Virus record (IMG/VR): IMGVR_UViG_3300032268_000986
Coordinates: 248,001 to 312,000 of that record
DNA length: 64,000 bases
Direction: 5' to 3' (one strand)
Shown here: positions 7,206-57,861 of the stretch, in pieces
Layout: every line of letters begins with the position of its first letter
How positions within the stretch are numbered: the first letter of the stretch is position 1
Made by a program: the position numbers and the translations under genes
The notes under the pieces: model-generated
What the model was told of the DNA's origin: nothing
Databases searched by the model: none
What the model saw: only the letters and a program-made list of their open reading frames with translations

Positions 7206-7206
7206 G

Positions 7207-7494: not shown

Positions 7495-7495
7495 G

Positions 7496-7804
7496 TTAAC
7501 CCAGTATCAACTTTTTCTCAGGCACCTTGATGCCGGTCACAGCTTCAATGTATTTCATGCGAACTGAATCATCAGTACGAGCATACAGAGCAACACTGTT
7601 GCTGTTCAGTGTGATGGTTTCCTGCGGGTCAGAAGTAAACATCGTGGGCACCAGACCCAGCCCCTGCGGCCCCGGAGCCACGCTGACCGGATCTTCCAGG
7701 GTGGCTGTGCTGCCAACGCACGATGTCACCTTGGCCACTAATTCTTCACCAGAGTTTAATTTAAAGGTATAAACTTTACCTGTTTCAAGTACAAGTTGCA
7801 TCAT
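7496..7804 (-). CDS. Sm-like fold phage protein
   Basis: VYTFKLNSGEELVAKV....L..P pattern typical of T4-like phage Sm-like proteins. Confidence 0.55.
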   Translation of the reverse strand: MMQLVLETGKVYTFKLNSGEELVAKVTSCVGSTATLEDPVSVAPGPQGLGLVPTMFTSDPQETITLNSNSVALYARTDDSVRMKYIEAVTGIKVPEKKLILG

Positions 7805-8022
7805 GTTAATTTCACTTTCAGTTCGTTAAATCCGCCCACTAACTCTTCGTCAATAAAGATCTGTGGCACTGTTCTAGCTGTGGGCACAGCTTCCAACAGT
7901 TGTTCTCGAGTCCAGTCACGACTCATGTTGCGTTCTTCAAATTCAATACCTTTTTGTTTGAGCAGGGCCTTGGCCTGGTCGCAGTAAGGACATTGATCTT
8001 TTGACCATACAATTGCTTTCAT
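7801..8022 (-). CDS. grx: glutaredoxin
   Basis: CPYC active site, TVPQIFID, GGF. Confidence 0.95.
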   Translation of the reverse strand: MKAIVWSKDQCPYCDQAKALLKQKGIEFEERNMSRDWTREQLLEAVPTARTVPQIFIDEELVGGFNELKVKLT

Positions 8023-8042
8023 TTAGTTTCCTCGGTTGTTAA

Positions 8043-10636: not shown

Positions 10637-11578
10637 TTATGTTTCCAGTGAATACTTAATTATGCCGCTGCGAACACTGTGTTCAACAACCAAGTTGTGC
10701 TGTGGCTTGACCAAGATAACAGGGTTTTCCCCAGGTCCCCAGTGTCCGGTGTCCAGGTAAAGTTTGTCTGAATCTTGTTGCATGCCCATGCGAGGCACAA
10801 CCAACACTGTTTTATCACGCCAGTTGTCAGTGGGTATTTCAAGCACCAACGAACGTGTGTCTTTGTTCCAGGTCATGACACAGTAACTGGCCACACAGGT
10901 GCCTGCTTGTACTGCTCGCATGTATGGAATCCAATTCCAAATAGTGGAAACTTCTCGATCAAATTGCATAATGCCATTGGTTAGTTCTATTGGCGGTGTG
11001 GGCAAGAACGTACAATCGTATGTTTTACATAATAATTCATTTACTGTGCGCACAAACTCCGAATCAATATCTACTCCTGGATTGAATATCCTGTTGACTT
11101 CTTCTTGTTGTTGTATGCCACATGCAAAACTATCTGGAACTTCTACTGCCCACATTTCTAAAAAATACTTGCCGGGTAAAAACGTAGATTTTTCATCACG
11201 TGGCAAACTATTCCACAATCCTTCCCACCACAAGTTGCCATTCACAGTCTCTGTAAATGTAATAGGCGTGGGCTGATAGTTGTGATCATAACGTTCATTG
11301 ATCAACTCAATTCGATCTGCCAGTTTTAATTGTTTAATAATTTCGCAACCAAGTTGATAACGATCATGGTCAATTTCGAATGCACGAATATGTCTGGCAC
11401 CATGTTTTAGTGCCAACATTGATAACAATCCTGTGCCAAACCCAATGTCGGTACAGTGTTGATTGGCCACATAACGAGAGAGAATTCTCTCGTAAAATTG
11501 ATTGCGAACAAAGTCATTGATCATGTTGAGGTTAACACCATCGTGTTGATACCAATCAATCTTGTTTAAAAAATCCAT
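10637..11578 (-). CDS. SAM-dependent methyltransferase, PRMT-like; start probably MDFL at 11578
   Basis: MIND..RN..Y, DIGFGTGLLS.LA..HGA, E-x8-E loop (ETVNGNLWWE), late TGHW motif; TAATG coupling to the upstream ORF. Confidence 0.75.
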   Translation of the reverse strand: MDFLNKIDWYQHDGVNLNMINDFVRNQFYERILSRYVANQHCTDIGFGTGLLSMLALKHGARHIRAFEIDHDRYQLGCEIIKQLKLADRIELINERYDHNYQPTPITFTETVNGNLWWEGLWNSLPRDEKSTFLPGKYFLEMWAVEVPDSFACGIQQQEEVNRIFNPGVDIDSEFVRTVNELLCKTYDCTFLPTPPIELTNGIMQFDREVSTIWNWIPYMRAVQAGTCVASYCVMTWNKDTRSLVLEIPTDNWRDKTVLVVPRMGMQQDSDKLYLDTGHWGPGENPVILVKPQHNLVVEHSVRSGIIKYSLET

Positions 11579-11769
11579 TACCAGTGCCTTATTGTGTTTG
11601 CCATGATAAACAAACATGTGATCACATGCAGTATCACCCAGAATGTTTTTAAAAACAATGCTATTCGGGCTTCGCGTAGTGTCAAGATAGGCACATCGGG
11701 CCTATCACTGTCAGACTTGCCCATCAAATGACCAGTGGCTCTGGCCCAGATTCGTTCAATACTGTTCAT
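11578..11769 (-). CDS. small membrane protein (63 aa); start probably MNSIE at 11769
   Basis: Hydrophobic C-terminal helix; stop overlaps the next ATG. Confidence 0.65.
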   Translation of the reverse strand: MNSIERIWARATGHLMGKSDSDRPDVPILTLREARIALFLKTFWVILHVITCLFIMANTIRHW

Positions 11770-11773
11770 GTGT

Positions 11774-12094
11774 TTATATTCTAAAACTTTCGCCGCAACC
11801 ACATCGGTCGCGTTCATTGGGATTGACAAATTCAAATCCTTCGTTTAAACCATTGCGCACATAGTCCACTTGCATGCCGTCAAGATACACATGGCTTTTG
11901 GGATCCACAAACAGTTTACACTGTGCGGAATCAATACAGATGTCATCGGGGGCAGGAGTATCTACATATTCTAACACATAAGCCAGGCCCGAGCAACCAG
12001 TGGTTCTAACGCCCAGACGTATGCCAAGCCCGCGACCTCGTTTGCTCAGTACTCGTGTGACCTGAGATTCAGCTGCGGGAGTCAGCGTTATCAT
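11774..12094 (-). CDS. iscA: A-type Fe-S carrier protein IscA
   Basis: [16 protein letters not shown] and C-terminal RCGCGESF. Confidence 0.92.
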
Positions 12095-12402
12095 ACGCCA
12101 AAACTGCTGCCGCAGCCACAGGTGGTAGTGGCGTTGGGATTGTTGATAACAAACTGACTGCCATTTAGGTCGTCTTTGAAATCTACCATGGCCCCGGCCA
12201 GGTACTGCATGCTCATGGCATCGGCTAGAACACCATCAATTTCAAAGTCGTCTTCGTTTTTGACTTCATCAAATGTGAATCCATACTGGAATCCTGAACA
12301 TCCACCGCCCTGCACAAACACTCGGACTTTTAGATTGGGATTGTTTTCTTCAACCAAGAGGTCAGAGATTTTTGATTTTGCTGATTCAGTTATGGTTATC
12401 AT
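12091..12402 (-). CDS. erpA: A-type Fe-S carrier protein ErpA/HesB-like
   Basis: [20 protein letters not shown] and TCGCGSSF. Confidence 0.9.
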
Positions 12403-12778
12403 GTTTTTCTCGGTAATCTTTTACAGCCGCCTTTATGGCATCTTCGGCCAGTATTGAGCAGTGTATCTTCACTGGCGGTAATGCTAGTTCTTCGGCGATT
12501 TGGGAGTTTTTGATGGCGCCTGCTTGGTCAAGTGTTTTTCCTTTGACCCATTCTGTAACAAGGCTGCTTGACGCAATCGCCGATCCGCAGCCATACGTTT
12601 TGAAGCGAGCATCTGTAATAATACCTGTATCATCATCTACCTTTATTTGTAGTTTCATAACATCGCCACAGGCTGGAGCACCCACCATGCCGGTGCCTAT
12701 GTCTGTGTCGTCCTTGCCAAACGATCCCACATTGCGTGGATTCTCATAGTGATCAATAACTTTGTTAGAATAAGCCAT
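12386..12778 (-). CDS. iscU: Fe-S scaffold protein IscU
   Basis: [43 protein letters not shown]. Confidence 0.96.
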
Positions 12779-12804
12779 GTGATATTTCCTTGTTGATTAT
12801 AACA

Positions 12805-12810
12805 TATTTA
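12805..12810 (-). promoter_or_regulatory. TAAATA late-promoter-like motif upstream of iscU
   Basis: Motif in the short gap before iscU; same motif precedes virion genes. Confidence 0.5.
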
Positions 12811-12823
12811 CTGGGCCAATACA

Positions 12824-13525
12824 TTATTTGGTTATCCAGTCGCACAGTGTTTGTGCAATTAATTCATGGCCTAGCTCGTTTGGGTGGCCACAGGTCCGCA
12901 AATATGGGTTTGATGGACTGTCTAGATCATCCAAATAGTCTGTCATGTCTTTGTATCCAAATAGTTGCACACAAGATTTGTGGTATATCCTATCAGTGTT
13001 AACACCTGGTAAATTTAGATCAATATCACTCCATCCAACAATGTAATAATCTTGTATTTTGTACTGTTGACATATTGCCTGCATGCTCAATACGTTTTTG
13101 TGTAGATTAAAATCTACCCCAGAAATTGAACTAAAATATTTTGTATAACTCCGAGACGCTTCATCAGTTTGGCCAGACCTCAAATCAACCACCTTGAACC
13201 CAGCAAGGTCCTTGGAAACAGTGATGTGTTTATTTACATCAGGAATGGGACTGTATAAATCCAATAGCACACAGTCTCTTGCCGGAGTAGTAATTAAAAA
13301 AACTGCCATTGAATTTTCCACATCTACATCGGTGCGCCGAACATAGTCCAGCAGTTGCAATACTGATCTGCTGTTGCTGGATCCGTTTATACCCAAATTG
13401 GTAAAATTGGTAGTGGATAATTTAACAGCCAGGCGTGCTCCAAATGTATCTGTTGGCAGAACTCCGGCACCTGCGGTCCAGCTGCATCCAAACACTGCCA
13501 ATGCAGGCATGGTCACAACTTGCAA
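12824..13525 (-). CDS. SGNH/GDSL-like hydrolase or acyltransferase
   Basis: VFGCSWTAG, N.GINGSSN, GHPNELGH blocks. Confidence 0.75.
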   Translation of the reverse strand: MQVVTMPALAVFGCSWTAGAGVLPTDTFGARLAVKLSTTNFTNLGINGSSNSRSVLQLLDYVRRTDVDVENSMAVFLITTPARDCVLLDLYSPIPDVNKHITVSKDLAGFKVVDLRSGQTDEASRSYTKYFSSISGVDFNLHKNVLSMQAICQQYKIQDYYIVGWSDIDLNLPGVNTDRIYHKSCVQLFGYKDMTDYLDDLDSPSNPYLRTCGHPNELGHELIAQTLCDWITK

Positions 13526-15834
13526 GCCTCGCAGTCCTCGACATCATCAAAATCAATTTGTTCCAATGATGCGGCTACTTCTTCGGGTTTCATTTTACTG
13601 CCTGCTTTGTTGATCAAGCTGTAGTAGAATGTTTTCAGTCCCCAGTAGTGGGCTTGCATTAAATTTTTAGCAATCAGAGTTGTGGGCACTTTGCGATCAG
13701 CCCAGTGTGCTGGGTTGTAAAATGTATTGGTTGATATGCTTTGATCCACATACGCTGCCAACACGGCTGCTGTTTTCAAGTAGCCGTCACAGTCTTTCTG
13801 TGCCCACATCAGTTGATATCGATTCTTGAGTCTTTGATAATCTGGCACCACTTGTGTGAGTGATCCAGCCTTGCTTTCTTTTACAGAGATTAGACTCATG
13901 GGCATTTCAATGCCATTGGTAGAATTGATCACAACTGAACTGGATTCCACCGGTGCAATGGCCATTTGGGTGGCATTGCGAACACCATGTTCTTTCATTT
14001 GTGCTCTCAACGGTTCCCAATCCAGTTCAGGAGCAAAGTCTGCTAGATCGTTTACACCCTGAGCTCTTAATTCCCAGGGGAATACACCTTGTCCATATCG
14101 TGTTTGGTCACTGCCTTCACAACGGCCACGTTCCCGGGCCAGCTCAACACTGGCTTCGGTCAAATAGTATGCCTGGTGTTCGGTCCATGTTTTGACATCT
14201 TGCAGGGCATCCTTTTCACCGTACTTGAACCCACGTTTGGCATGCCAGTATGACAAATTGGTAACCCCAATACCCAAGGGACGAATTTCATCATTGCTTA
14301 ATTTGGACTGAATGCTTAAAAAGTCTTGATAGTCCAATATATTATTGAGACTACGGTGTAGGATGCGACAAGCACGGCGCATGTCTTCAGGATTACGAAA
14401 TGCGCCCCAGTTGATTGAGCCCAAGGTGCAAAGTGCAATACGGCCAGACTCGTCATCCAAACGTTTAAAAGACTTGGTAGGAAGTAGAATTTCACAGCAG
14501 AGGTTACTCTGGTAAATGGTGTGGTACTCAGGATCAAACGGACCTTGCTTCATGACATTGTCAATGAACACTAGATAGATACGTCCTGTATCTGTTCTCT
14601 CTTTTAATATGCCACCCTTGAACACTTCTTCCGCAGCCATTACTTTCTTTCGAAGTCCACCCTGCTTTTCGTATTTGACATACAGTTCTTCAAACAGTGC
14701 AGTGTTTGTGTAGAACGCTTCGTACAAATCAGGAACTTCGTTGGGGTCAAAGAAACTTATGTTTTCTCGGTTTTTAAATCGTCTCCAGAAGAAAGCACTA
14801 AGCACAACCCCATAATCCATATGACGGACTCGGGTTTCTTCGGTTCCTTGGTTGTTTTTAAGTACAATAAGATCATCAAACTGATGATGCCAAATAGGAT
14901 AGAATACAGTAGCACTTGCATTACGAATACCTCCCTGTGAACATGATCGTAAATCTCCGAACCATTTTTTCAGGAAAGGTATCATACCTGTGTGCATAAT
15001 CTCACCACCACGGATGGGACTACCCAATGGTCGTAGTCGACCAATCTCCAACCCAATGCCGGCTCGCTTGCTGGCATACTTGGCCATCATTTCCCCGGAC
15101 GCAAAAATACTGTCCAGATCATCATCCGAGCGAATAAGAACGCAACTACTAAATTGCTTAGTAGGTGTACCAAGTCCTGCCAGCACCGGCGTGGCCAATG
15201 TAAATAATCCGTCACTGGCTGCTGTGTAGTACTCTTTGATGTAGCGCATTCTCGCTGTGTTCGGTTCTTCTGAGTGAAATACAGTAGCGGCCGCGACCAT
15301 GTATCTAACTTGTGGAGTTTCATATATTTCCTTTGTGGCACGATTGCGTACCAGATATTTTTCAATCAACTGCTCAATGGCTGCATAACTGTATTGTTCA
15401 TCTTTGTCATGATCAATCATGGCCTCCATCTTGTTCCAGTCTTCTGGTGTGTACCACTCCAACAACTCGGGAGTGTAAAGACCAATTTCTACATTGCGTT
15501 TGACAATCTCGTAAAGATGCGGGGGCTGGTATGAACCATACACATCTTTGCGCAACATGCTCAAGCGTTGTTTGCCGGCCACATACTGATAGTTGACATG
15601 TCCAACATCAGGATTGGCTTCCACATCAATCAAGTCCACGATGGCACGTAAGGTAATGCCATCAATTTCACGAGTAGAGATTCCATCGTAAAAATGCATC
15701 TGAGCTTTGATTTCGATCATGCTCTGACTCACATCTGCTGTGCCCTTGCACACCTTGGCCACTTGATTTTGCCACTTTTCAATATGCAGCAGTTCTCGGC
15801 TGCCGTTGCGCTTTTGTACAGAGATTGTTTTCAT
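13513..15834 (-). CDS. nrdA: ribonucleotide reductase class Ia alpha subunit with ATP cone
   Basis: VQKRNG ATP cone, QFSSC, QSNLCCEI, LCTLG, APVESSS, C-terminal CEACKL. Confidence 0.97.
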   Translation of the reverse strand: MKTISVQKRNGSRELLHIEKWQNQVAKVCKGTADVSQSMIEIKAQMHFYDGISTREIDGITLRAIVDLIDVEANPDVGHVNYQYVAGKQRLSMLRKDVYGSYQPPHLYEIVKRNVEIGLYTPELLEWYTPEDWNKMEAMIDHDKDEQYSYAAIEQLIEKYLVRNRATKEIYETPQVRYMVAAATVFHSEEPNTARMRYIKEYYTAASDGLFTLATPVLAGLGTPTKQFSSCVLIRSDDDLDSIFASGEMMAKYASKRAGIGLEIGRLRPLGSPIRGGEIMHTGMIPFLKKWFGDLRSCSQGGIRNASATVFYPIWHHQFDDLIVLKNNQGTEETRVRHMDYGVVLSAFFWRRFKNRENISFFDPNEVPDLYEAFYTNTALFEELYVKYEKQGGLRKKVMAAEEVFKGGILKERTDTGRIYLVFIDNVMKQGPFDPEYHTIYQSNLCCEILLPTKSFKRLDDESGRIALCTLGSINWGAFRNPEDMRRACRILHRSLNNILDYQDFLSIQSKLSNDEIRPLGIGVTNLSYWHAKRGFKYGEKDALQDVKTWTEHQAYYLTEASVELARERGRCEGSDQTRYGQGVFPWELRAQGVNDLADFAPELDWEPLRAQMKEHGVRNATQMAIAPVESSSVVINSTNGIEMPMSLISVKESKAGSLTQVVPDYQRLKNRYQLMWAQKDCDGYLKTAAVLAAYVDQSISTNTFYNPAHWADRKVPTTLIAKNLMQAHYWGLKTFYYSLINKAGSKMKPEEVAASLEQIDFDDVEDCEACKL

Positions 15835-15835
15835 G

Positions 15836-18903: not shown

Positions 18904-18932
18904 AGTTTAACACAAAATTGTCAGTGTGTCAA
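18904..18932 (-). promoter_or_regulatory. sigma70-type promoter TTGACA-N17-TAAACT
   Basis: TTGACA cactgacaattttgtgt TAAACT. Confidence 0.7.
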
Positions 18933-20215
18933 CCGCGAACTTGGTAATATGATTCTTGGTCAGATTCGGACAACAGATCCCACAACCTTGAATTGTAATC
19001 TTTCATTTCAATTCGAGTACGGTTGTCAAAATCTGCTGCCATGGTGAGATATTCATTCCACAAACGGTTATTGTCCGGACTATCACCCAAGCAAAATGCA
19101 TGCAGTCCTTCGATAAAAGTTCTAAATGTGTTCCATCCTGGATTGTCTGACGCCTGTGCAATTTGCAATGCACGATTGCATCTTTGGGCTAGTTCAAGTC
19201 GACATCGTTTTGGCATGACTTCCACGGCTGCATATTCGGGCCAGTGCAAATACATGATGCTAAAGTCTGGTTGTTGGTTGTGAGTTTTACCCCATTGATC
19301 CCAGTATTCAGCAATGCTGTCAATGTAAAACACATTACTCACGCTGATAACCAAATTGATGTTGAAATCAAATTGACCCGGATTGGCCTTTTTCAGATCC
19401 AGAGCTTGTTGTACAGTGCGTTCTATTCTTTCAAAACGTGCTGGCCAACGCACATAGTGATAGTTTTCCCCAACACTGTCAATGCTGAAGTTCAAGAACA
19501 CTCGACGAAATTTAGGAATAGCATCCACAAACATTTGATTGATACTGGTGCCATTGGTCGTGGCACTGAGGATCACTCGTTGTGAAAAGTCTTCGCCTAG
19601 ACTGTCCAAGAACTCCATTAGTCGATCCAGTCCAGGCTGTATCATGGATTCTCCGCCAGTCAAATTGATTTCAACAAATCGGTACGTGTTCAACACATCC
19701 ACTAGATACTGTTTAACAGTTGACCATATCACAGGATCATCGGTGATGTCCTGAACAAAATGATCCAGTGCTGGCTGTTTTAATACATCGGCTAGTAGGC
19801 TGCTGAATTCTGGTTGGCAACTTCGGCAAGCAAGATTACAAAGATTACTGAATTTGATAGTGACTCTGTTGGAGTCAGTTTGAGGAGAAAATTCTAAATT
19901 ACTGCTGAGTGTATTAACTGAATCTCGCATGCGCTCTGACACACTGTTGTGCTGTTCGCTGTGAACACATACATGACACTGACTGTTGGTTTTTTGATCC
20001 AGTACATCTTGCTTGATCTCTTGAAACAATTCTGAGAAAGGGCGACCAAATTCCAAATCATTTTCGCGCCAATTGCAACAGGGAATTGCTCGCATGCCAC
20101 GACTGCCTTGCAGTAAGAAAAGATTCTGAAATGGCTTTGCGCAGGCGCTGGGATTCTGCTTGAGCCAAACTATTTTTTGGTCGTATAAGGATGCGGGGTC
20201 GTTGTTGATTGCCAT
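18929..20215 (-). CDS. radical SAM enzyme with N-terminal twitch/SPASM-like Cys cluster
   Basis: C.KPF...PCC and C..C at N-terminus; CNLACRSC; TGGE; TTNGT; SIDSVG..Y.YVRW. Confidence 0.88.
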   Translation of the reverse strand: MAINNDPASLYDQKIVWLKQNPSACAKPFQNLFLLQGSRGMRAIPCCNWRENDLEFGRPFSELFQEIKQDVLDQKTNSQCHVCVHSEQHNSVSERMRDSVNTLSSNLEFSPQTDSNRVTIKFSNLCNLACRSCQPEFSSLLADVLKQPALDHFVQDITDDPVIWSTVKQYLVDVLNTYRFVEINLTGGESMIQPGLDRLMEFLDSLGEDFSQRVILSATTNGTSINQMFVDAIPKFRRVFLNFSIDSVGENYHYVRWPARFERIERTVQQALDLKKANPGQFDFNINLVISVSNVFYIDSIAEYWDQWGKTHNQQPDFSIMYLHWPEYAAVEVMPKRCRLELAQRCNRALQIAQASDNPGWNTFRTFIEGLHAFCLGDSPDNNRLWNEYLTMAADFDNRTRIEMKDYNSRLWDLLSESDQESYYQVRG

Positions 20216-34121: not shown

Positions 34122-34561
34122 TTGACATCTCGTCCCAATTGTCGATCGTGATCGTCCAGGTCTTTGGTAGAAACCACAGTCATCATGACATCCAGTTCGT
34201 CATCTCGATAAGTGGGATACAACTCCTGTAGACGCTTTCGTTTGGCACCGGCTCCGGCTTCTTTTTTCTTGGGCGCAACCCAGTTGTGCTTCATTGCCCC
34301 CAAGCCCGGGCTCACGGCAGTGGCACACAACCACTGCAATTTGGGGTGCCGGCCAATTGTGAAGAAGTGTTTGTTCAAGTAGTGGTTACAACTTTGCACA
34401 TAGTACTCTTGCAACTCCTGAGCACCGTCCACACAACTACCCCAACGGATCATGAGAAAAGTACTGAACTTCTTGAGCTCTTCTGTGGTAAGACTGTTGT
34501 AGAACTCTCGGTTCTTGACGTCCAGTTGACGCATCTCGTTGTGTATTGATAGCTTATCCAT
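34118..34561 (-). CDS. probable clamp-loader small subunit (T4 gp62-like); start probably MDKLS at 34561
   Basis: Size, position in the replication module, F.MIRW.S...N..LN.H...HPKLQW...W.APKK pattern. Confidence 0.55.
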   Translation of the reverse strand: MDKLSIHNEMRQLDVKNREFYNSLTTEELKKFSTFLMIRWGSCVDGAQELQEYYVQSCNHYLNKHFFTIGRHPKLQWLCATAVSPGLGAMKHNWVAPKKKEAGAGAKRKRLQELYPTYRDDELDVMMTVVSTKDLDDHDRQLGRDVK

Positions 34562-35612
34562 ACTTGAAAATTTTCCTATAGACCTGTTGTTGGACTGGCA
34601 AATGTTGAAACCATCCCTCACCCCGGGTGTGATCCATCATGAGCTGGCGTGCTGTGAACTTCCACCAGGCCTGAGTATTGTCCACTGTGCGCAGTACATC
34701 AATAGCTCGATCAATGTTGACATGCCGATGTGGTGCTGTTTCCAACTTGGCAATCAAATTGTCTCGAAATTCCCAGGGAATCAAGCCCAGTCCCTCTGCA
34801 CCATCAGGATTGGCCAATACTGGTTGGAACGCATGTTCCGTGACCTGTTGCTGTGAAAGATAGTCAAACAATTGATCTATCCACCAAACATTAATGGCAC
34901 TGATCACTGGTGCATAGGATAATTGTACATAAGATTGTGATTTACACCAAGCAATATTTTCTTCAATTTGACTCCATTTGGTGCCACTGCGAACTATTTC
35001 GGCAATCTCTCCCACGGCATCAATGCTGGCATTGACATTGATATACTTGAACTTGGACCAGTAGTCTTTCACGTGTTTGTTCTTGTAGCCCAACACAGTC
35101 ATATTGGTGCTGTACATCACACGAGGTTGCACCCGAGCTGCAATCAATTTTTCCAACAGCTGATAGTGCTGTGGATTCAGCAGTGGTTCACCGCCGGCAA
35201 AATACACCTGTTGACAATGACTCAAGTCAATGTCGCCCAATTCAACTTCTTCGTGTAAATGAATCACCTGTTGACCCAGTTCACTGGCCCAGCTGGTGCT
35301 GAATCCTGGACCACAACTGCGACATTTCAAATTGCAGAGATTGTTGTTTCTAAAATCCAAGAAGTGAACCTGCAAGTTGGTCAAGTCAGTGGGATAGTGC
35401 TGAAACATCTTACGCCAGCCTTCTCGCTCAGGTGGGCATGAGTTCATGCACTCCTGAGGAATTTCACCTCGCAAAAAAGCACCGCCTACTACGTCACGAA
35501 CCTGTTCAGGACTGTCAAAGTGATCGCCGCCCCAGCTGCAACAGGGTGTGAACTTGCCGCCAGGCATGTAGGTGACTGCGGTCCATGGAGCCTTGCAATA
35601 GATTTCACTCAT
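34554..35612 (-). CDS. radical SAM enzyme with N-terminal twitch-like Cys cluster
   Basis: CKAPW...PCC, CNLKCRSC, AGGEPL, YSTN.T, ASIDAVG..AEIVRSG. Confidence 0.9.
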   Translation of the reverse strand: MSEIYCKAPWTAVTYMPGGKFTPCCSWGGDHFDSPEQVRDVVGGAFLRGEIPQECMNSCPPEREGWRKMFQHYPTDLTNLQVHFLDFRNNNLCNLKCRSCGPGFSTSWASELGQQVIHLHEEVELGDIDLSHCQQVYFAGGEPLLNPQHYQLLEKLIAARVQPRVMYSTNMTVLGYKNKHVKDYWSKFKYINVNASIDAVGEIAEIVRSGTKWSQIEENIAWCKSQSYVQLSYAPVISAINVWWIDQLFDYLSQQQVTEHAFQPVLANPDGAEGLGLIPWEFRDNLIAKLETAPHRHVNIDRAIDVLRTVDNTQAWWKFTARQLMMDHTRGEGWFQHLPVQQQVYRKIFKYG

Positions 35613-48960: not shown

Positions 48961-50015
48961 TATTCTTCCTCAACGTCAACAACAGGTGTGGCATCCTTTT
49001 GATTGCCAAAATCTTTCATCACAGTGTCAAGACAGCCGTCAGTATTGGCTTCCCATGCCTTGCGAAACTTCTTGATGATCTCGCCATCGCTTGTGGTAAA
49101 CACTAGACTGTTGCCTTCGCGTTTGAGCAGGCCTTTTTTCTCAATCAAGTCCACAAGACCTGAGTAAGGGCTCATGCCTGTTTCATAAGGAATCTTGACT
49201 TGCACTCCCTCGAACGGCTTGGCATAGCGTGTTTTCATTACTTTACAGCCAGCACGAATACCAGTTACATCTGAAATCTTGTTGCCGTCTTCGTCCTCTT
49301 TGAGTTTCATCTTCTTCATGGCCACCACAATTGAGCTGGCGTAAATGAAACCTTGACCACCTGAAATCTTGTCGTCTGGATCAAACATGTCTTGACTGGC
49401 GTATGTGTGATTGGTACAAACCAGGCCCACGTTGTAACTACCAAACATGTTGACACAGTTACGCACCAAGGCGGTAAGAGCTTTGGGCTTGCGACCTAGG
49501 TCACCTTTCATTTCGCCTGCATCAAATTGATTCACATCAGTGGGTGTCAGCAACATGCCCAGGCTGTCAATTACAAACATGACCTTGGGTCGCTCGGCAG
49601 GATCAAGAGCTTTGTAGTCGCTCATGAATGTAGAGATAGTTTTAGCTACATCGTCAATCATGGCCATTGACAATTTGAGTAACTTGCTGTCACTGGTATC
49701 AACTCCCAGGGCCTTGAGCCAGTCTTCGTCCAAGGCATTTTCGCTGTCAATCAACACTACAAAGATGCCTTGCTGTTGTGCATGTTTGATAATGTTGCCA
49801 CTACAGATGTAACTTTTACCTGCGCCCGAGTCACCGGCAAACACCGTGACCTTGCCCAAGGGGATACCTCGATCAAAGTCTCCTGAGATCAAGTAGTTCA
49901 AAGCATAGTTGCCTGTGGAGATCCAGTCTGTGGGATCATTGAATCCAATCGACAATCCGTCGATACTTTTTGTAATTTCCTTGCGGAATTTTGATACGTC
50001 AAATGGTTTAGCCAT
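48960..50015 (-). CDS. uvsX: RecA/UvsX recombinase
   Basis: STGNYALN, GDSGAGKS, IDSEN, VIDSLG, TNHTY, SGG.G..YASS. Confidence 0.95.
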   Translation of the reverse strand: MAKPFDVSKFRKEITKSIDGLSIGFNDPTDWISTGNYALNYLISGDFDRGIPLGKVTVFAGDSGAGKSYICSGNIIKHAQQQGIFVVLIDSENALDEDWLKALGVDTSDSKLLKLSMAMIDDVAKTISTFMSDYKALDPAERPKVMFVIDSLGMLLTPTDVNQFDAGEMKGDLGRKPKALTALVRNCVNMFGSYNVGLVCTNHTYASQDMFDPDDKISGGQGFIYASSIVVAMKKMKLKEDEDGNKISDVTGIRAGCKVMKTRYAKPFEGVQVKIPYETGMSPYSGLVDLIEKKGLLKREGNSLVFTTSDGEIIKKFRKAWEANTDGCLDTVMKDFGNQKDATPVVDVEEE

Positions 50016-51606
50016 GGTATTTTCCTTTGTAAATGATATCTGCTATTTCTGGATGTGTCTGATTAAATTTTTGATCTCTTATATTGTCTAATTTTAGCAT
50101 GAATTTTGATAGTTCGTCAATTAAATCTGGTGAATATTTGTTCTGTTTGAGTAAGGCAATGATAGGAAATACATTGTGTTTTATTAACTTGTCATGATCA
50201 ATTTGAGATAATTTGTCAATGACTTGAGTTGTTAATTCCGTATTCATTGCTGTTATGCTTAAAAATTTTGGGTGTTCTAATAAATTAAAATTTAATTTGT
50301 TAAATTTTTTTGTATCTACCCAGGTTATTAACTGATCAAGATAATAAACATTTTGAACATTAACTGTGGTAAAAATACTAAGGATCATGTTTGGTAGTTT
50401 GTTTTCTAAGAATTTATCTAAGTTAACATTGACCAAATCCCATTTCCCCCCGCGCTCTAATTCAAACCGTGTACCTATGTTATCTATGCTAAATGCAATG
50501 TCAACTTGTCGGAACAACTTCCATTTTTCAAACAAATGTGCTGGGTACACAGACCCGTTTGAATTGTAATGTAGTCTAATTTTGTGTGCCAGGTCATGCT
50601 CTATTAGATAATCTAAAAATGTCTCTTGTTGCTTGATGAGAAACGGCTCGCCACCATAAAAATCAATGTTAACCAGCTGATTTCCCAACGTGTTAAACAT
50701 TTTCCAAATTTGATCATTTTTGACCCACTGTCCTTTTCGATTGAGATTTTTGAGATCAATAATAGAGTCAAAGTGTCGTGCCTGTTCTTCTGCTATTTTT
50801 GAACTAGCGTCTGAATTGCATATTCTGCATGCAAAATTACAAAGATTTCCTAGTTTTAAATCTAGACTAACTAAATTTTCAAGTTGATCTTGCTCTATGT
50901 CTAAACATTGCGCATCAATCCCAAGACAATCACTGAACCACTGTCGATTTGATTGCCCTTTATGTTGTTCTTTCATCCAGCAGCTCGAACATCCGGCAGG
51001 ACGATCCCCGTCGAGAAATTGTGTTCTTAACCTTGTTAAATAGTCACTGTGGTAGACTTCTTCAATACTATTAGTATTGATATTGTAGGGAACATTGTTG
51101 GAATCCGTTATTGATTCTTTATACACACAACAAGGTCTAAATTCGCCTTGTGACGAAATTTCTAAATGTGCCCATGGACTAAAACAAAATGTGTCAGGCA
51201 AGGTAATTGCAGGATTCTTAACAACCTCAGGTGCGACGTCACTAAATTTTATGTCCAGTGTTGAAAAAATACAATCATCTGTTGAATAGTTGCGTCTAAC
51301 TAATTCAAGATGATCTTGATCAATGTCAGAACCAGAACTACAAATTAAAATAAAAAAGTTAGATATATCTAACAGCGTTGCGCTTTTTTGTATGTGTATT
51401 AAAGTTTCAACTGATATCAAATTTCTACTGTACAGAACTATTCGACTATGATCACTGTATTCTGGTTGGTACCATTGTTTAAATAATTTATACAGTGTTT
51501 TTCGAGGTTGACCAAGTAATTGATCTAGGTCGATTACACCAACTATTTGATAGTTGTAATGTTGTTCTAAATACTGTTTTAGGTCAGTTGAGGGTATCGG
51601 TGTCAT
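50008..51606 (-). CDS. radical SAM enzyme with twitch-like Cys cluster and extra N-terminal domain; AT-rich gene
   Basis: CFSPW.HL.I...G..RPCC, C.SCW, CNFACRIC, YGGEPF, YNSNG, FSIDNIG. Confidence 0.9.
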   Translation of the reverse strand: MTPIPSTDLKQYLEQHYNYQIVGVIDLDQLLGQPRKTLYKLFKQWYQPEYSDHSRIVLYSRNLISVETLIHIQKSATLLDISNFFILICSSGSDIDQDHLELVRRNYSTDDCIFSTLDIKFSDVAPEVVKNPAITLPDTFCFSPWAHLEISSQGEFRPCCVYKESITDSNNVPYNINTNSIEEVYHSDYLTRLRTQFLDGDRPAGCSSCWMKEQHKGQSNRQWFSDCLGIDAQCLDIEQDQLENLVSLDLKLGNLCNFACRICNSDASSKIAEEQARHFDSIIDLKNLNRKGQWVKNDQIWKMFNTLGNQLVNIDFYGGEPFLIKQQETFLDYLIEHDLAHKIRLHYNSNGSVYPAHLFEKWKLFRQVDIAFSIDNIGTRFELERGGKWDLVNVNLDKFLENKLPNMILSIFTTVNVQNVYYLDQLITWVDTKKFNKLNFNLLEHPKFLSITAMNTELTTQVIDKLSQIDHDKLIKHNVFPIIALLKQNKYSPDLIDELSKFMLKLDNIRDQKFNQTHPEIADIIYKGKYHG

Positions 51607-51627
51607 TTGAGTTTAATCAGAGAAATT

Positions 51628-51652: not shown

Positions 51653-51665
51653 GTCTACTATCTGC

Positions 51666-54568: not shown

Positions 54569-54575
54569 GGTAGTA

Positions 54576-54581
54576 TATTTA
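54576..54581 (-). promoter_or_regulatory. TAAATA late-promoter-like motif, 7 nt before ATG
   Basis: TAAATA tactacc ATG. Confidence 0.55.
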
Positions 54582-56168
54582 GCGCATTATGGAAATAAAG
54601 GGCATGGGTTCAACTATGACATCGCCATGATCTTTGAGGTGACTGTCCAATTCAGAGTGATAGGTTTGCAACAACATCAACATGCGCACTGCCAACAAAC
54701 TGCTCATCACAAGATCATCAGTTTCCCCGGGTTTGGCAGAGTAACTGGTGCCAGCTGCCACAAAGGTCTTGAGCTCAGAAATCAAGGGCTTGCTGTACAG
54801 TTTCATGCGGCCCGATTCCACAAGGATTTTGAACTTGTTGCAGGCTGTGATCTTGGCCTTGTGTGTGGTGTTGAAACCTTTGCGGAATCTGCGACCTGTG
54901 GTGCCTGTCACAGAGTTGTCGCTGAGAAAGTACCCAGGAATATTTTCTTCACCGTATTCTGCAATAGAGATCAAGGCTGCTTCTCCCAGGGTGTTGTTTT
55001 CCACCGAGTAATACACGCTCTTGTCGTTCTTGGTCACTGCTTTTATTTCCTTGATGATGTCCACCAGTATGCGAACTTGACTGGGCACATCAGTTTTGTT
55101 GTGGCGCCACTCGGCTACTTGTTCTGTGGTGTCGGCCTCAAAAACCTGTATAGCTGCTGGATCACCTCCGGTGCCCAGGCTGGGATCCAAGGCAACAATG
55201 TACATTTTACCTGGGTTGATTGGCTTGTACCAGCGCACTTGACCGGTACGGTGTATGGGGTCAACTCCTTCTATCTCCAGCAGTTTGATAGGGGATATCA
55301 AAGTTTCATCGTTGATAACAAACTCACAGTCCATTTCTCTGCGGAAACGTTCTTCACCCAGCTGAGCTCGTTGTTCATTGGCCCAGGCATCATCACGATC
55401 TGGGTGTTCTCTCCAATAGGCGCGGTACGCACGGAAGCCATTGATGCCTAGACCGTCGGGTCTGGGATTGCCGTACTCGTCTTCAATCTTGTTGGCACCT
55501 TTCCAGATATAAGCAAATTGATCTTCGTCTGAGTTGGGAGTTGATGTGATAATGGCTTTACCACCAGTGCTCAATGTGGGAGTGATGGAAGTCCAAAACT
55601 CCTTGGCAATTGTGGGTCGCACAAACGCAAACTCATCAAGATACAGCAAGGTGATACTCATACCACGGCCGGTGTTTTCAGTTGTGGTCTGACTTACAAT
55701 ACGGCTACCGTTGTCAAACTCTAGGCTTCCTTTGTTGTAGCTGGTGGCGCCGGCACGAATGTGATTGGGGCACAACTCATAAGCATATCTTATGCGTTGC
55801 ATGATTTCCTGGGCGCCTAGATACTTGTGTGCAGCAATCAAGATTGTGCTGTCGGGAATAAACATGGCATACCACAGCAGGTATCCAGCTGCTGATGTTG
55901 ATTTGCCTGTTTGTCGAGGCATGAGACTGATACTAAATCTATTGGTGTGATAGTTGTCAATCAGCTTTTTTTGATAGTCATAAGCATGGTACAACATCTT
56001 GCCACGTGTGGGATGCTGAATGTGAAAAAAGTTGTCCATGAAGTATGCCGGGCCCGTGACAGGGTCGGCGCACAGTGCAAATTCTTGTAGTTCTTGATTG
56101 GTGTAGGTCTCTCGTCTGTGTGGCGATTTGACCAGTACAGTGTCCAGTGTTGGTTTCATTCCAATCAT
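54579..56168 (-). CDS. terL: terminase large subunit (T4 gp17-like)
   Basis: PRQTGKST, RGMSITLLYLDEFAFV, IITSTPN, ALDPSLG.G.D, DDLVM. Confidence 0.96.
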   Translation of the reverse strand: MIGMKPTLDTVLVKSPHRRETYTNQELQEFALCADPVTGPAYFMDNFFHIQHPTRGKMLYHAYDYQKKLIDNYHTNRFSISLMPRQTGKSTSAAGYLLWYAMFIPDSTILIAAHKYLGAQEIMQRIRYAYELCPNHIRAGATSYNKGSLEFDNGSRIVSQTTTENTGRGMSITLLYLDEFAFVRPTIAKEFWTSITPTLSTGGKAIITSTPNSDEDQFAYIWKGANKIEDEYGNPRPDGLGINGFRAYRAYWREHPDRDDAWANEQRAQLGEERFRREMDCEFVINDETLISPIKLLEIEGVDPIHRTGQVRWYKPINPGKMYIVALDPSLGTGGDPAAIQVFEADTTEQVAEWRHNKTDVPSQVRILVDIIKEIKAVTKNDKSVYYSVENNTLGEAALISIAEYGEENIPGYFLSDNSVTGTTGRRFRKGFNTTHKAKITACNKFKILVESGRMKLYSKPLISELKTFVAAGTSYSAKPGETDDLVMSSLLAVRMLMLLQTYHSELDSHLKDHGDVIVEPMPFISIMR

Positions 56169-56749
56169 GTGATATTGGGCTTTAATAATGTGTACGAGGT
56201 CAGTCTAAATGTGCCCACAGGCACAGGGTTGAGCATGCCATGAAACAAGCCAGTGGTTTCAGCATTGTTTAAAGGGTTGGTCATTATGTATCCTGTGTTG
56301 GCCTGAGATTCAAACTGTTTTCTCACTTGCTGGCCTTGACTGTCATGATAAAAACAGGTGCCCTGTTCAGAATGGCCTATCCAATACATCTGCATGGCGC
56401 CCGGCAACGCACCGTCGGTATGTATAGGGCAATCAAACCCTTCATGATCCAACCAAAACACAGTATGTCCATGATGATGACTGAGTAAAGGCATGTTGAT
56501 CATGGTGCTGATACGAAACCATATCTGTTGTTGATTGGTTGTCCATTGGTCTCCCCAGGACAGATCATGAAGTTCAATTCTGCGTCGAGGCCAGGTTTCT
56601 TGGCAAGGTTGAGTACTGTGTGGGACATTCAACCAGTCCGTGGCAAGTATTTGTTGCAAAAGATCTGAGGGCACCAGGTCAGTTACCTGGAACAGATTTG
56701 GAACACTGTCAACTGCGGTTATTTGCATAGGTGTGATAACTCTGGCCAT
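56165..56749 (-). CDS. 2OG-Fe(II) oxygenase-like protein
   Basis: HTD...FHG...R facial triad and 2OG-binding Arg pattern. Confidence 0.7.
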   Translation of the reverse strand: MARVITPMQITAVDSVPNLFQVTDLVPSDLLQQILATDWLNVPHSTQPCQETWPRRRIELHDLSWGDQWTTNQQQIWFRISTMINMPLLSHHHGHTVFWLDHEGFDCPIHTDGALPGAMQMYWIGHSEQGTCFYHDSQGQQVRKQFESQANTGYIMTNPLNNAETTGLFHGMLNPVPVGTFRLTSYTLLKPNIT

Positions 56750-57861
56750 AGCTTTTCAAACTCACCTGCTTTGTCAGGATGGAACACAGTTTCGTTGTCC
56801 ACTATGTGTTGTTTGAATTGTTTTTCAATTCCAGGTCGGGCCTGTTTTATGTCACGATACATATTTAATGAGTTATCAAAAAATGCACGTTCAGCCGGAG
56901 TGGAGATCCCTAGATTGTAAAAACGTTCTATCTCAGAAATTGCTGCGGCTGCAACTTCTGGACCATGCAGAAATGGATCAAGATACTCTGGTTGAAACAG
57001 GTTCTGCCACAACACTGTGGTACCAGTTTGCTCGGCAAATTCGCGCAGTTCACAAATGCGTGTGGCATTGTAGATGTTGTACACTGCATGTATGCCACCC
57101 CACTGTCCTTGCGTTTTCATCAAGTCCTTGATCAGTTGCAAGTTGTGTTGAATTGTGCTCCAGGTGGCACCATGTCGCACATATTCAAGGCGATCACCGG
57201 TGTTATCAAAGCTCATGCTCCAGCCCACTTTGTTTCTAGTTGATAACTTTTGAAATATCTTGTTTGATTCTAGATCAACATTCAAGTTTGTAATCAGTGT
57301 GACAATTGCGTCCTTGGGTATGACATCCAACAAACGATTGTTTTCTGGCAACAACAAGGGCTCGCCGCCTACCAGCGCAACTTCATGTATGTGTTCGTAG
57401 TGCTGTTCAATGAAGTCACACACTGAATCGTAGTAGGGTCTTGCACCACTCTTGAATGGAATACCTTTGATGCCGGCCCATTTTGAGCTGCATGATTCAC
57501 CGCAGTAGTTACAACTCAGGTTACAAGTGGTATTCCAACGCACATCCACAATCACAGGATAGTGATATTTGTCTCCTGCTGTGGCATAATCAAAGTTGGG
57601 ATTTACATTGTTGTGCCAGGCCCGTTCAGAATCAGCACCAAATCGTTCTGCTCGCACACAATTGCTGCAATACTCATGTGGGATTCCTTGTGCAAGACTA
57701 TTGCGTATCTTGCCCATGAGATCAGAGTTTAAAATCTCAACAATGCTCTGTGAGTTCAAGTTGCCCAGCATGTTGGGATTGCCGGCACAGCAGGTTTTTA
57801 CATCGCCCCTGGGATTGATATGTAGGCCGCGCCAGGGAGCGGCACAATAGAAATTTGTCAT
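56719..57861 (-). CDS. radical SAM enzyme with N-terminal twitch-like Cys cluster
   Basis: CAAPW.GLHI.P.G.V.TCC, CSNC, CNLSCNYC, VGGEPL, ITN, SFDN.G.R.EYVRHG. Confidence 0.92.
   Translation of the reverse strand: MTNFYCAAPWRGLHINPRGDVKTCCAGNPNMLGNLNSQSIVEILNSDLMGKIRNSLAQGIPHEYCSNCVRAERFGADSERAWHNNVNPNFDYATAGDKYHYPVIVDVRWNTTCNLSCNYCGESCSSKWAGIKGIPFKSGARPYYDSVCDFIEQHYEHIHEVALVGGEPLLLPENNRLLDVIPKDAIVTLITNLNVDLESNKIFQKLSTRNKVGWSMSFDNTGDRLEYVRHGATWSTIQHNLQLIKDLMKTQGQWGGIHAVYNIYNATRICELREFAEQTGTTVLWQNLFQPEYLDPFLHGPEVAAAAISEIERFYNLGISTPAERAFFDNSLNMYRDIKQARPGIEKQFKQHIVDNETVFHPDKAGEFEKLWPELSHLCK

What the first reader, a model, noticed from the sequence alone, without database searches (positions are those of the whole stretch)
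11774..12810. Phage-encoded IscU-ErpA-IscA cassette inserted between nrdA and nrdB
A scaffold and two distinct A-type carriers keep all conserved Cys and are translationally coupled. No IscS, HscBA or ferredoxin is present in this window, so sulfur donation would come from the host (or elsewhere in the genome). Two non-exclusive clients: the four radical SAM enzymes, or iron delivery to the NrdB diferric cofactor given the location. The sequences look proteobacterial (from recall, betaproteobacterial-like), hinting at the host.
Basis: partly seen in the sequence, partly recalled or inferred. Interest (0 to 1): 0.7.

Follow-up and report, generated by a model that had tools for sequence, protein, structure and literature searches.

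The report
Phage iron-sulfur assembly genes inside RNR operon
A 343-kb freshwater jumbo phage carries three intact, strongly conserved bacterial-type genes for building and delivering iron-sulfur clusters (IscU, ErpA, IscA) between its two ribonucleotide reductase genes. This is a real but already known kind of phage helper gene set, most likely feeding the phage's 14 radical SAM enzymes.

Summary
On the minus strand, IscU (12386-12778), ErpA (12091-12402) and IscA (11774-12094) are intact, overlap by 17 and 4 nt, and keep every cluster ligand plus the LPPVK chaperone-binding motif. They lie between class Ia nrdA and nrdB in a 342,865-bp IMG/VR virus record that has a large terminase, 33 tRNAs and a tmRNA. 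Contigs from independent freshwater metagenomes bridge all junctions, so this is not a chimera.

The whole genome has no IscS, HscA, HscB, ferredoxin or Nfu, but it has 14 radical SAM hits, four of them in the window.

The cassette is not rare. IMG/VR holds more than 600 IscU and 327 ErpA relatives, and 55 of the 80 best ErpA loci carry all three genes. Phage copies form their own clades next to or inside Burkholderiales sequences. dN/dS against near relatives is 0.01-0.13.

Phage iscU, A-type carrier genes and their co-occurrence with radical SAM genes were published in 2017.

The less described part is the position. The isc genes sit between the RNR alpha and beta genes in 27 of 160 phage loci, across two RNR lineages only 22% identical. 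Some relatives add SufC-SufD-SufS.

Verdict: a new member of a known kind, of moderate interest.

The parts
12386..12778 (-). IscU, the Fe-S cluster assembly scaffold (130 aa)
   Evidence: TIGR01999 scores 222.8 bits (cut-off 192.4) and PF01592 184.5 bits. It is about 80% identical to solved H. influenzae and E. coli IscU. C37, D39, C64, H106, C107 and LPPVK are present and invariant or nearly so in 136 phage copies. It also matches phrog_8429.
12091..12402 (-). ErpA-type (type I) A-type carrier (103 aa); its start overlaps the IscU 3' end by 17 nt
   Evidence: NF010147 scores 154.3 bits (cut-off 117). The best solved relative is H. influenzae HI1723, E 5.8e-36. C35, C95 and C97 are invariant in 87 phage copies. 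The phage clade has 100/100 support and is nested in Burkholderiales ErpA.
11774..12094 (-). IscA-type (type II) A-type carrier (106 aa); ATGA overlap with the ErpA stop
   Evidence: TIGR02011 scores 150.3 bits against a cut-off of 150.6, and TIGR00049 110.3 against 58.8. The best solved relative is E. coli IscA (1s98), E 2.5e-39. C34, C98 and C100 are invariant in 119 phage copies.
13513..15834 (-). nrdA, class I RNR large subunit (773 aa), upstream flank
   Evidence: ORF. It is 84-97% identical to nrdA next to the isc genes in related phage loci.
9536..10636 (-). nrdB, class Ia RNR small subunit (366 aa), downstream flank
   Evidence: The best solved relatives are E. coli NrdB entries, E 6e-74. 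The positions aligned to the E. coli Fe ligands and the radical tyrosine are conserved.
12824..13510 (-). SGNH/GDSL-hydrolase-like ORF (DUF6071-like viral family) between nrdA and IscU; an accessory insertion
   Evidence: There was no Pfam, NCBIfam or PHROG hit. Atlas feature hits score 0.96 to viral DUF6071/SGNH clusters, which is a lead only. The ORF is absent from the nearest relatives L184-L188.
11578..11769 (-). Small ORF (63 aa from the internal ATG), phrog_1679, function unknown
   Evidence: It follows IscA in near relatives but lies kilobases away from IscU in other loci.
10637..11578 (-). Class I SAM-dependent methyltransferase-like ORF (PrmA-like viral family); an accessory insertion
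   Evidence: Weak NCBIfam methyltransferase hits and Atlas PrmA-type viral clusters at 0.96-0.97. It is present at 70% identity in L186-188 and absent from L184/185.
7801..8022 (-). Dithiol (CPYC) glutaredoxin, probable RNR reductant, at the end of the RNR block
   Evidence: PF00462 scores 62.3 bits. It follows nrdB in most related loci.
18929..20215 (-). Radical SAM protein (428 aa), candidate client
   Evidence: PF04055.
34554..35612 (-). Radical SAM protein (352 aa) with Fer4_12, candidate client
50008..51606 (-). Radical SAM protein (532 aa) with a SPASM domain before the core, candidate client
56719..57861 (-). Radical SAM protein (380 aa) with an N-terminal SPASM domain, candidate client
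54579..56168 (-). Large terminase subunit, the phage hallmark that fixes the context
   Evidence: PF03237 and PF17289; phrog_36964 at 401.5 bits.

Best explanation
The three genes are a working, phage-maintained fragment of the bacterial ISC pathway: the scaffold IscU, a type II carrier (IscA) and a type I carrier (ErpA). During infection the phage IscU would receive sulfur from the host cysteine desulfurase IscS and electrons from host ferredoxin. It would release clusters with the help of host HscA/HscB, which recognise the conserved LPPVK motif. IscA and ErpA would then build or carry [4Fe-4S] clusters to apo-proteins. The main clients are most likely the phage's own 14 radical SAM enzymes, several of which have SPASM auxiliary-cluster domains and so need up to three [4Fe-4S] clusters each. 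The cassette would raise Fe-S supply when this demand appears suddenly and host synthesis declines. Shown here: gene identity, intact ligands and motifs, phage location, purifying selection, long residence in phages, absence of the other ISC parts, and the large radical SAM complement. Inferred: use of host IscS/Fdx/HscBA, the order IscU to IscA to ErpA (taken from the E. coli model of Vinella et al. 2009, my own knowledge), and the identity of the clients.
For: The family scores are above or at the curated cut-offs. Residue-level alignments to solved IscU, ErpA and IscA show all ligands and LPPVK present. These positions are invariant in 136, 87 and 119 phage copies, even though overall identity falls to 49-62%. 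dN/dS against the nearest relatives is 0.011-0.127, similar to nrdB at 0.082. Phage copies form their own clades: ErpA 100/100; IscU SH-aLRT 92 for 79 of 82 copies; IscA 76, with the cellular clade at 98. The genome has 14 PF04055 hits, 9 over the cut-off, with SPASM or Fer4_12 domains. It has no Aminotran_5, Fer2, HSP70 or Nfu, and no HscB apart from the J domain of a DnaJ-like protein. Related isc-carrying jumbo records hold 12, 13 and 12 radical SAM hits, and two fragments hold 12 and 10. Related phages place SufC-SufD-SufS directly upstream of IscU-IscA, which ties the module to cluster biogenesis proper. The same idea was proposed for marine viral genomes with IscU/ATC, up to 12 radical SAM genes and grx (PMC5332604). 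Lake metatranscriptome contigs at 93-98% identity span the IscU/ErpA and ErpA/IscA junctions, which suggests transcription.
Against: There is no biochemical or genetic evidence. A 157-kb record that is 91% complete carries IscU and ErpA but has no radical SAM hit over the cut-off, so radical SAM enzymes cannot be the only clients across the lineage. The cassette lies next to the RNR genes, not next to any radical SAM gene; the nearest is about 6 kb away. The RNA-library matches could be DNA carry-over or come from relatives. Promoter and terminator scans were no better than shuffles, so the transcription unit is not defined.
Confidence: 0.68

Rival explanations
1. The cassette serves the neighbouring class I ribonucleotide reductase. 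It would deliver iron or reducing power for assembly or repair of the NrdB diferric-tyrosyl cofactor, either directly or by maturing a host YfaE-type [2Fe-2S] ferredoxin. This may operate alongside supply to radical SAM enzymes.
For: isc genes lie between RNR alpha and beta in 27 of 160 phage loci, and an RNR gene is present in 70 of 160. Among 44 loci with at least 4.5 kb on both sides, 23 have an RNR gene and 13 are directly adjacent; after dereplication this is 19 of 37 clusters. The position recurs in many gene orders, including IscU alone or ErpA alone between nrdA and nrdB. It also recurs in a second RNR lineage only 22% identical, whose beta is nearest to PDB 9dws and then to Chlamydia R2. 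NrdB here keeps all Fe ligands and the tyrosine. From my own knowledge, E. coli keeps the Fe-S ferredoxin gene yfaE in its nrdAB operon, and yeast Rnr2 cofactor assembly depends on Fe-S proteins.
Against: Related phages share gene order by descent, so the counts are not independent. The nrdA-nrdB interval is plastic and also takes unrelated cargo: an SGNH-like ORF, a methyltransferase, a GATase-like ORF and unknown ORFs that differ between close relatives. About half of the fully flanked loci have no RNR nearby. The phage has no Fer2 ferredoxin. No A-type carrier is known to load NrdB. The NrdB-ErpA complex prediction gave no answer and counts neither way.
Confidence: 0.2
2. This is a general host-support gene set. 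The cassette keeps host Fe-S enzymes working (respiration, isoprenoid and nucleotide synthesis) under iron-poor or oxidising lake conditions, with no dedicated phage client.
For: A nearly complete 157-kb phage has IscU and ErpA but no radical SAM gene. Small marine and freshwater phages are reported with iscU and erpA. From my own knowledge, ErpA in E. coli serves respiratory complexes and IspG/H.
Against: Radical SAM genes are strikingly numerous in the jumbo members that carry the cassette. This rival is hard to separate from the main explanation, because both use the same biochemistry.
Confidence: 0.1
3. This is an artefact: host DNA joined to phage DNA during assembly, or a recent, decaying capture with no function.
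For: IscU is 84-87% identical to Comamonadaceae IscU. The record is a metagenome assembly classed as linear.
Against: Contigs from other samples and another study bridge every junction at about 97% identity. More than 100 viral contigs carry the same genes between phage-type RNR genes, and none of the 160 loci carries an iscRSUA-hscBA context. Phage copies form separate clades, dN/dS is 0.01-0.13, and all ligands are invariant.
Confidence: 0.01

Closest known systems
Bacterial ISC operon (iscRSUA-hscBA-fdx) of Betaproteobacteria, plus the unlinked erpA
   Same: IscU, IscA and ErpA are clear homologues: 84-87%, 60-68% and 69-72% identity to Burkholderiales proteins. All ligands and the LPPVK motif are present.
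   Different: Only three of the roughly nine components are present. IscR, IscS, HscB, HscA and Fdx are missing. ErpA is fused into the same gene string as IscU and IscA, which cellular genomes do not do: cellular ErpA was found at separate loci. The phage ErpA starts at cellular residue 9-10, so it lacks the short N-terminal extension.
Viral Fe-S assembly auxiliary genes: phrog_8429 (NifU-like) and phrog_17776 (A-type carrier); marine environmental viral genomes with IscU/ATC, up to 12 radical SAM genes and grx (Nishimura et al. 2017, PMC5332604); iscU/erpA in HMO-2011-type phages (PMC9038755) and in lake viromes (PMC13760526)
   Same: The same gene families occur in phages, with the same co-occurrence with many radical SAM genes and a glutaredoxin, and the same proposed role.
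   Different: This is a freshwater lineage of betaproteobacterial rather than gammaproteobacterial ancestry. It has scaffold, type I and type II carriers together as one overlapping string. It is placed inside the class I RNR operon, which I did not find described in the papers I could search.
E. coli nrdA-nrdB-yfaE operon (an Fe-S ferredoxin gene kept with class Ia RNR; my own knowledge)
   Same: An Fe-S-related gene is embedded in a class Ia RNR operon.
   Different: YfaE is a [2Fe-2S] ferredoxin that reduces the NrdB cofactor. The phage has no Fer2 gene, and what sits in its operon is assembly machinery.
SUF-type modules in related jumbo phages (SufC-SufD-SufS-IscU-IscA, L020/L303/L305)
   Same: The same IscU-IscA pair (89% and 58% identity) occurs in phages that share other genes with this genome at 50-64%.
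   Different: Those relatives bring their own cysteine desulfurase and SufC/D ATPase complex. This phage does not: there was no tblastx match to that stretch.

Membership tests
IscU (TIGR01999 / PF01592 NifU_N) | Profile score over the curated cut-off | tested here: met
   222.8 bits against 192.4; PF01592 184.5 against 22
IscU (TIGR01999 / PF01592 NifU_N) | Cluster ligands: three Cys plus Asp and His | tested here: met
   C37, D39, C64, H106 and C107 align to E. coli and H. influenzae IscU. C64, H106 and C107 are invariant in all 136 phage copies, and C37 and D39 in 135 of 136
IscU (TIGR01999 / PF01592 NifU_N) | LPPVK motif for HscA binding | tested here: met
   Residues 100-104; invariant in 136 copies
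IscU (TIGR01999 / PF01592 NifU_N) | Assembles a [2Fe-2S] cluster with IscS | not testable with these tools
   Needs biochemistry
ErpA, type I A-type carrier (NF010147) | Profile score over the curated cut-off, and higher than for the IscA/SufA models | tested here: met
   154.3 bits against 117; the IscA models score 58-66 bits
ErpA, type I A-type carrier (NF010147) | C-X(n)-C-G-C cluster ligands | tested here: met
   C35, C95 and C97; invariant in 87 copies
ErpA, type I A-type carrier (NF010147) | Groups with cellular ErpA in a tree | tested here: met
   The phage clade is nested in Burkholderiales ErpA when rooted on Acinetobacter ErpA
IscA, type II A-type carrier (TIGR02011) | Profile score over the curated cut-off | tested here: inconclusive
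   150.3 bits against 150.6, which is 0.3 bit short. The subfamily model TIGR00049 passes at 110.3 against 58.8, and the IscA score is far above the ErpA score of 69.6
IscA, type II A-type carrier (TIGR02011) | Three conserved Cys | tested here: met
   C34, C98 and C100 align to E. coli IscA C35, C99 and C101; invariant in 119 copies
Complete ISC system | Cysteine desulfurase IscS | tested here: not met
   No PF00266 match in the 343-kb genome at E 0.1, and no tblastn hit
Complete ISC system | HscA/HscB chaperones and Fdx | tested here: not met
   No HSP70 and no Fer2. The only HscB-like hit is the J domain of a DnaJ/CbpA-like protein
Viral Fe-S auxiliary genes (phrog_8429, phrog_17776) | Match to the PHROG profiles, and location in a virus genome | tested here: met
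   139.5, 135.1 and 136 bits; terminase and other phage genes in the window
Class Ia RNR (NrdAB) as the flanking operon | Ferritin-like beta subunit with Fe ligands and radical tyrosine | tested here: met
   Alignment to E. coli NrdB, E 6e-74, with the ligand positions and the Tyr conserved

The most novel reading that the evidence does not exclude
In a large group of freshwater phages, the Fe-S scaffold and carrier proteins are dedicated accessory factors of class I ribonucleotide reductase. They would supply iron or electrons to build or repair the beta-subunit metallocofactor. This would explain why the isc genes have been kept between the alpha and beta genes through many rearrangements and across two RNR lineages that share only 22% identity. 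It would be a bacterial-world counterpart of the Fe-S dependence of RNR cofactor assembly known in yeast.
Probability: 0.15. Interest if true: 0.75.

Novelty: new member of a known kind. Interest (0 to 1): 0.42.

Why it matters
The cassette shows that jumbo phages with a heavy load of radical SAM enzymes also carry the cofactor supply line for them. The line is reduced to the parts that are probably limiting, the scaffold and the carriers, and the sulfur donor and chaperones are left to the host. That gives a defined minimal set to test for what limits Fe-S enzyme maturation in an infected cell.

The repeated placement of these genes inside class I RNR operons is a concrete, testable lead on how the RNR metallocofactor is assembled in bacteria, a question still open beyond YfaE.

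For virome annotation, iscU, erpA and iscA at 85% identity to Comamonadaceae should not be read as host contamination or as a reliable host marker.

Tried and rejected
- **Megablast against GenBank phages:** the 6.5-kb region found nothing.
- **tblastn against GenBank phages:** most hits were bacterial contigs mislabelled as phage, for example 'Acinetobacter phage MD-2021a', which carries iscRSUA-hscBA-fdx. The true phage hits were a lone iscU in phage C48C1, a Microcystis phage and two huge uncultured phages.
- **Promoter and terminator scan of 7000-17000:** counts were no different from shuffles, so no transcription unit could be drawn.
- **Rfam over 7000-17000:** no known RNA family.
- **Gp23 capsid family search:** uninformative, because the control rang nowhere.
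- **Complex prediction of NrdB2 with ErpA2:** returned 'no answer' and is evidence neither way.
- **Narrowing the donor or host below order level:** this failed. The ErpA clade is sister (100/100) to an unnamed low-GC 1.8-Mb Burkholderiales genome, but that genome's IscU is only 81% identical, below the Comamonadaceae values. The flanks of its erpA are not conserved, and a compositional artefact is possible.
- **Terminase search in the SufCDS-carrying relatives:** found nothing in those 61-70% complete records. Their kinship to this phage rests on shared genes at 50-64% identity.
- **Chimera idea:** rejected.
- **Phage HscB:** rejected. The hit is a DnaJ/CbpA-like protein.

Full report
**What is in the sequence.**
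- On the minus strand, window 7801-16267 is one tightly packed, co-directional gene string.
- In order it holds: a 143-aa ORF, nrdA (13513-15834) and an SGNH-hydrolase-like ORF (12824-13510).
- After a 45-nt gap come IscU (12386-12778), ErpA (12091-12402) and IscA (11774-12094).
- These are followed by a small phrog_1679 ORF (11578-11769), a PrmA-like methyltransferase ORF (10637-11578) and nrdB (9536-10636).
- The string ends with a PGDYG protein, a YHYH protein and a CPYC glutaredoxin (7801-8022).
- IscU passes its equivalog cut-off (222.8 against 192.4 bits) and so does ErpA (154.3 against 117). IscA misses its own by 0.3 bit (150.3 against 150.6) but passes the A-type carrier subfamily model.
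- The ErpA start overlaps the IscU 3' end by 17 nt, and the ErpA stop and IscA start share ATGA. This fits translational coupling but does not prove it.

**Residues.**
- The phage IscU aligns almost without gaps to solved H. influenzae and E. coli IscU. It keeps C37, D39, C64, H106, C107 and the LPPVK motif.
- ErpA aligns best to H. influenzae HI1723, and IscA to E. coli IscA. Both have the three cysteines in place.

**Phage context.**
- The window is bases 248001-312000 of a 342,865-bp IMG/VR virus record, estimated 99% complete.
- The window itself holds a large terminase (phrog_36964, 401 bits), a virion structural protein, a DnaB-like helicase, a second helicase, an ATP-dependent ligase and an SSB.
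- The genome is 47.1% G+C and carries 33 tRNAs and a permuted tmRNA.

**Not a chimera.**
- Logan contigs from a second sample of the same study, and from a different study, bridge nrdB-methyltransferase-small ORF-IscA-ErpA-IscU and IscU-SGNH-like ORF-nrdA. They are strain variants about 97% identical.
- Five IMG/VR contigs are near-identical relatives (ErpA 97-99%) with the same nrdA-IscU-ErpA-IscA-nrdB order.

**What the genome lacks and has.**
- The whole genome has no Aminotran_5 (IscS or SufS), no Fer2 ferredoxin, no HSP70, no Nfu domain and no class III RNR.
- The only HscB-like hit is the J domain of a DnaJ/CbpA-like protein.
- It has one NifU_N gene and two Fe-S_biosyn genes, the ones in the finding.
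- It has 14 radical SAM matches, 9 over the Pfam cut-off, and four of them are in the window.
- Five of the 14 carry SPASM domains and two carry Fer4_12, so several need more than one [4Fe-4S] cluster.

**How common the cassette is.**
- Among the 80 best IscU loci, 63 have IscU followed by IscA only, 4 have both carriers and 2 have ErpA only.
- Among the 80 best ErpA loci, 55 carry all three genes, in the orders U-E-A, E-U-A, U-A-E and A-E-U.
- None of the 160 loci shows the cellular iscRSUA-hscBA context, whereas all 80 best cellular loci do.
- In GenBank phage records true cases are few, and most hits are mislabelled bacterial contigs.

**Origin.**
- The nearest cellular IscU proteins are from Comamonadaceae and other Burkholderiales (84-87%). 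ErpA is 69-72% identical and IscA 60-68%. ErpA of Salmonella, E. coli and Acinetobacter is about 52% identical.
- In trees the phage copies form their own groups: 79 of 82 IscU (SH-aLRT 92, with the Comamonadaceae clade at 98), all 87 ErpA (100/100, nested in Burkholderiales when rooted on Acinetobacter) and all 119 IscA (76, with cellular betaproteobacteria at 98).
- This fits one old capture per gene from a betaproteobacterial donor, followed by long descent in phages. It does not fit a recent host grab.
- The alignments are short (107-130 columns) and the sampling is the best 80 per search, so deep branching is not firm.
- The donor cannot be narrowed below order, because the ErpA and IscU trees point to different Burkholderiales.

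**Selection.**
- Across the phage copies the cluster ligands and LPPVK are invariant, apart from one IscU row that differs at C37 and D39. Overall identity to the window proteins falls to 62%, 61% and 49%.
- Against the nearest relatives dN/dS is 0.011-0.054 for IscU and ErpA and 0.08-0.13 for IscA. nrdB is 0.082.

**Clients.**
- Relatives with IscU in records of 300, 262 and 374 kb have 12, 13 and 12 radical SAM matches. Fragments of 86 and 120 kb have 12 and 10.
- This agrees with the published marine case of a 183-kb T4-like viral genome with an A-type carrier, 12 radical SAM genes and grx. Its authors proposed that viral Fe-S assembly proteins serve viral Fe-S enzymes (PMC5332604).
- Against an exclusive link, a 157-kb record that is 91% complete has IscU and ErpA but no radical SAM match over the cut-off.
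- Some relatives of this phage share other genes with it at 50-64% identity. They place SufC (253 bits, over cut-off), a SufD-like protein and a SufS-family desulfurase directly upstream of IscU-IscA. This ties the module to cluster biogenesis rather than to some other use of the proteins.

**The RNR neighbourhood.**
- isc genes lie between the RNR alpha and beta genes in 27 of 160 phage loci, and an RNR gene is in the locus in 70.
- Of 44 loci with at least 4.5 kb on both sides, 23 have an RNR gene and 13 are directly adjacent. After dereplication at 95% nucleotide identity this is 19 of 37 clusters.
- The arrangements differ widely: a-U-E-A-b-g, a-E-U-A-b-g, a-U-b-g, a-E-b-g, a-E-A-b-U-g and a-b-U-A-g, among others.
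- A second phage group shows the same sandwich. Its RNR is only 22% identical, its alpha subunit is shorter, and its beta subunit is nearest to PDB 9dws and then to Chlamydia R2.
- This is more than one inherited gene order and is the least described aspect of the finding.
- Two cautions apply. Related phages are not independent samples. The interval is also plastic: the SGNH-like ORF, the methyltransferase, PGDYG and YHYH are absent from the closest relatives L184/185, and other phages hold a GATase-like ORF there.
- NrdB here is a standard class Ia protein with its Fe ligands and tyrosine. The phage has no YfaE-type ferredoxin.
- A complex prediction of NrdB with ErpA gave no answer.

**Expression.**
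- Three lake metatranscriptome runs hold short contigs at 93-98% identity. They cover ErpA, IscU, the IscU/ErpA junction and the ErpA/IscA junction, which are arrangements that only the phage form has.
- The same runs hold none over the methyltransferase or the SGNH-like ORF.
- This suggests that relatives transcribe the cassette. DNA carry-over is not excluded, and the contigs may come from relatives that lack the accessory ORFs.

**Verdict.**
- The finding is a well-preserved member of a known class of phage auxiliary genes. It belongs to a large freshwater jumbo-phage lineage rich in radical SAM enzymes.
- The most likely role is Fe-S supply for phage enzymes using host IscS, ferredoxin and HscBA.
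- A dedicated role in RNR cofactor assembly is a minority reading, kept alive by the recurrent gene position.

Noticed in passing
Window 56719-57861 and 50008-51606; also L165 (genome 56438-57655) and L171 (genome 54611-55873): Four radical SAM proteins have the SPASM auxiliary-cluster domain on the N-terminal side of the radical SAM core. Examples are SPASM 6-68 with core 111-249, and SPASM 141-210 with core 252-415. To my knowledge the usual position is C-terminal. A fifth protein (L166) has the usual order.
   Followed up: partly
Genome G000:C1 50294-59920 (outside the window): Five radical SAM hits lie within 10 kb (50294-52222, 53299-54624, 54611-55873, 56438-57655, 58565-59920), which looks like a modification or biosynthesis cluster. 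Related fragments show similar clusters, for example 12 hits in 60-81 kb of G073.
   Followed up: no
L020 3350-6685; also L303, L304, L305, L306, L307 (IMG/VR contigs up to 245 kb): Relatives of this phage encode SufC (TIGR01978, 253 bits, over cut-off), a SufD-like protein and a SufS-family cysteine desulfurase directly upstream of IscU-IscA. This is a hybrid SUF/ISC module with its own sulfur donor, and it is absent from this genome.
   Followed up: partly
L204 3454-8596 and L258 2383-7323: A second phage group has a short class I RNR alpha subunit (603-622 aa). Its beta subunit is nearest to PDB 9dws and then to Chlamydia trachomatis R2, but a Tyr aligns with the window NrdB's radical tyrosine. 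It holds IscU-IscA-ErpA between alpha and beta, together with a GATase-like ORF or an unknown 211-aa ORF.
   Followed up: partly
Genome G000:C1 91040-109238; tmRNA at 105048-105526 (L295 340-696): There is a block of 33 tRNA genes and a permuted (two-piece type) tmRNA with tag ANDSQFALAA. It matches RF04321 at 135.9 bits and alpha_tmRNA weakly. This may be a host clue.
   Followed up: partly
Genome G000:C1 167428-168249 (L301 929-1750, minus strand): A 273-aa DnaJ/CbpA-like protein has a J domain with HPD, a Gly-rich linker and a C-terminal domain, but no zinc finger. It is a phage co-chaperone for a host Hsp70, not an HscB.
   Followed up: partly
Window 8043-13510 compared with L184-L188: The nrdA-nrdB-grx block gains and loses cargo between close relatives. 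The SGNH-like ORF and the YHYH protein are found only in this phage. The methyltransferase and PGDYG are shared with L186-188. All four are missing in L184/185.
   Followed up: partly
Window 8043-9128: A 361-aa YHYH-domain protein (PF14240) has an N-terminal signal-like sequence (MKKILLAFALALCSHVVAAQD) and a His/Pro-rich tail. It is probably secreted or periplasmic, sits inside a nucleotide-metabolism block, and is of unknown role.
   Followed up: no
GenBank records CAKLQH020000011.1, CAKLQF020000009.1 (L003) and CAKLQH020000026.1 (L293): Records named 'Acinetobacter phage MD-2021a' carry ordinary chromosomal genes (ppiD, hupB, iscRSUA-hscBA-fdx, erpA, anmK). They look like bacterial contigs filed as phage. 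Several short 'Salmonella/Escherichia/Listeria phage' records that hit IscU or ErpA may be of the same kind.
   Followed up: partly
L086 (CALRUK020000005.1, 264-kb contig of a 'Synechococcus sp. UW140' MAG): The contig carries a full iscRSUA-hscBA operon whose IscU groups with Hydrogenophaga and other Comamonadaceae. It is probably a misbinned betaproteobacterial contig.
   Followed up: no
Window 23194-25119: A 641-aa protein has a DUF6267 domain (102 bits) in the replication and structural region. Its function is unknown.
   Followed up: no
L040 7892-8248 and L042 11985-12374: Two related phage loci have an Hsp70-like gene start (37% identical to HscA residues 22-146) about 5.6 kb downstream of IscU-IscA, cut off by the locus end. 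It could be a phage DnaK/HscA-type chaperone.
   Followed up: no
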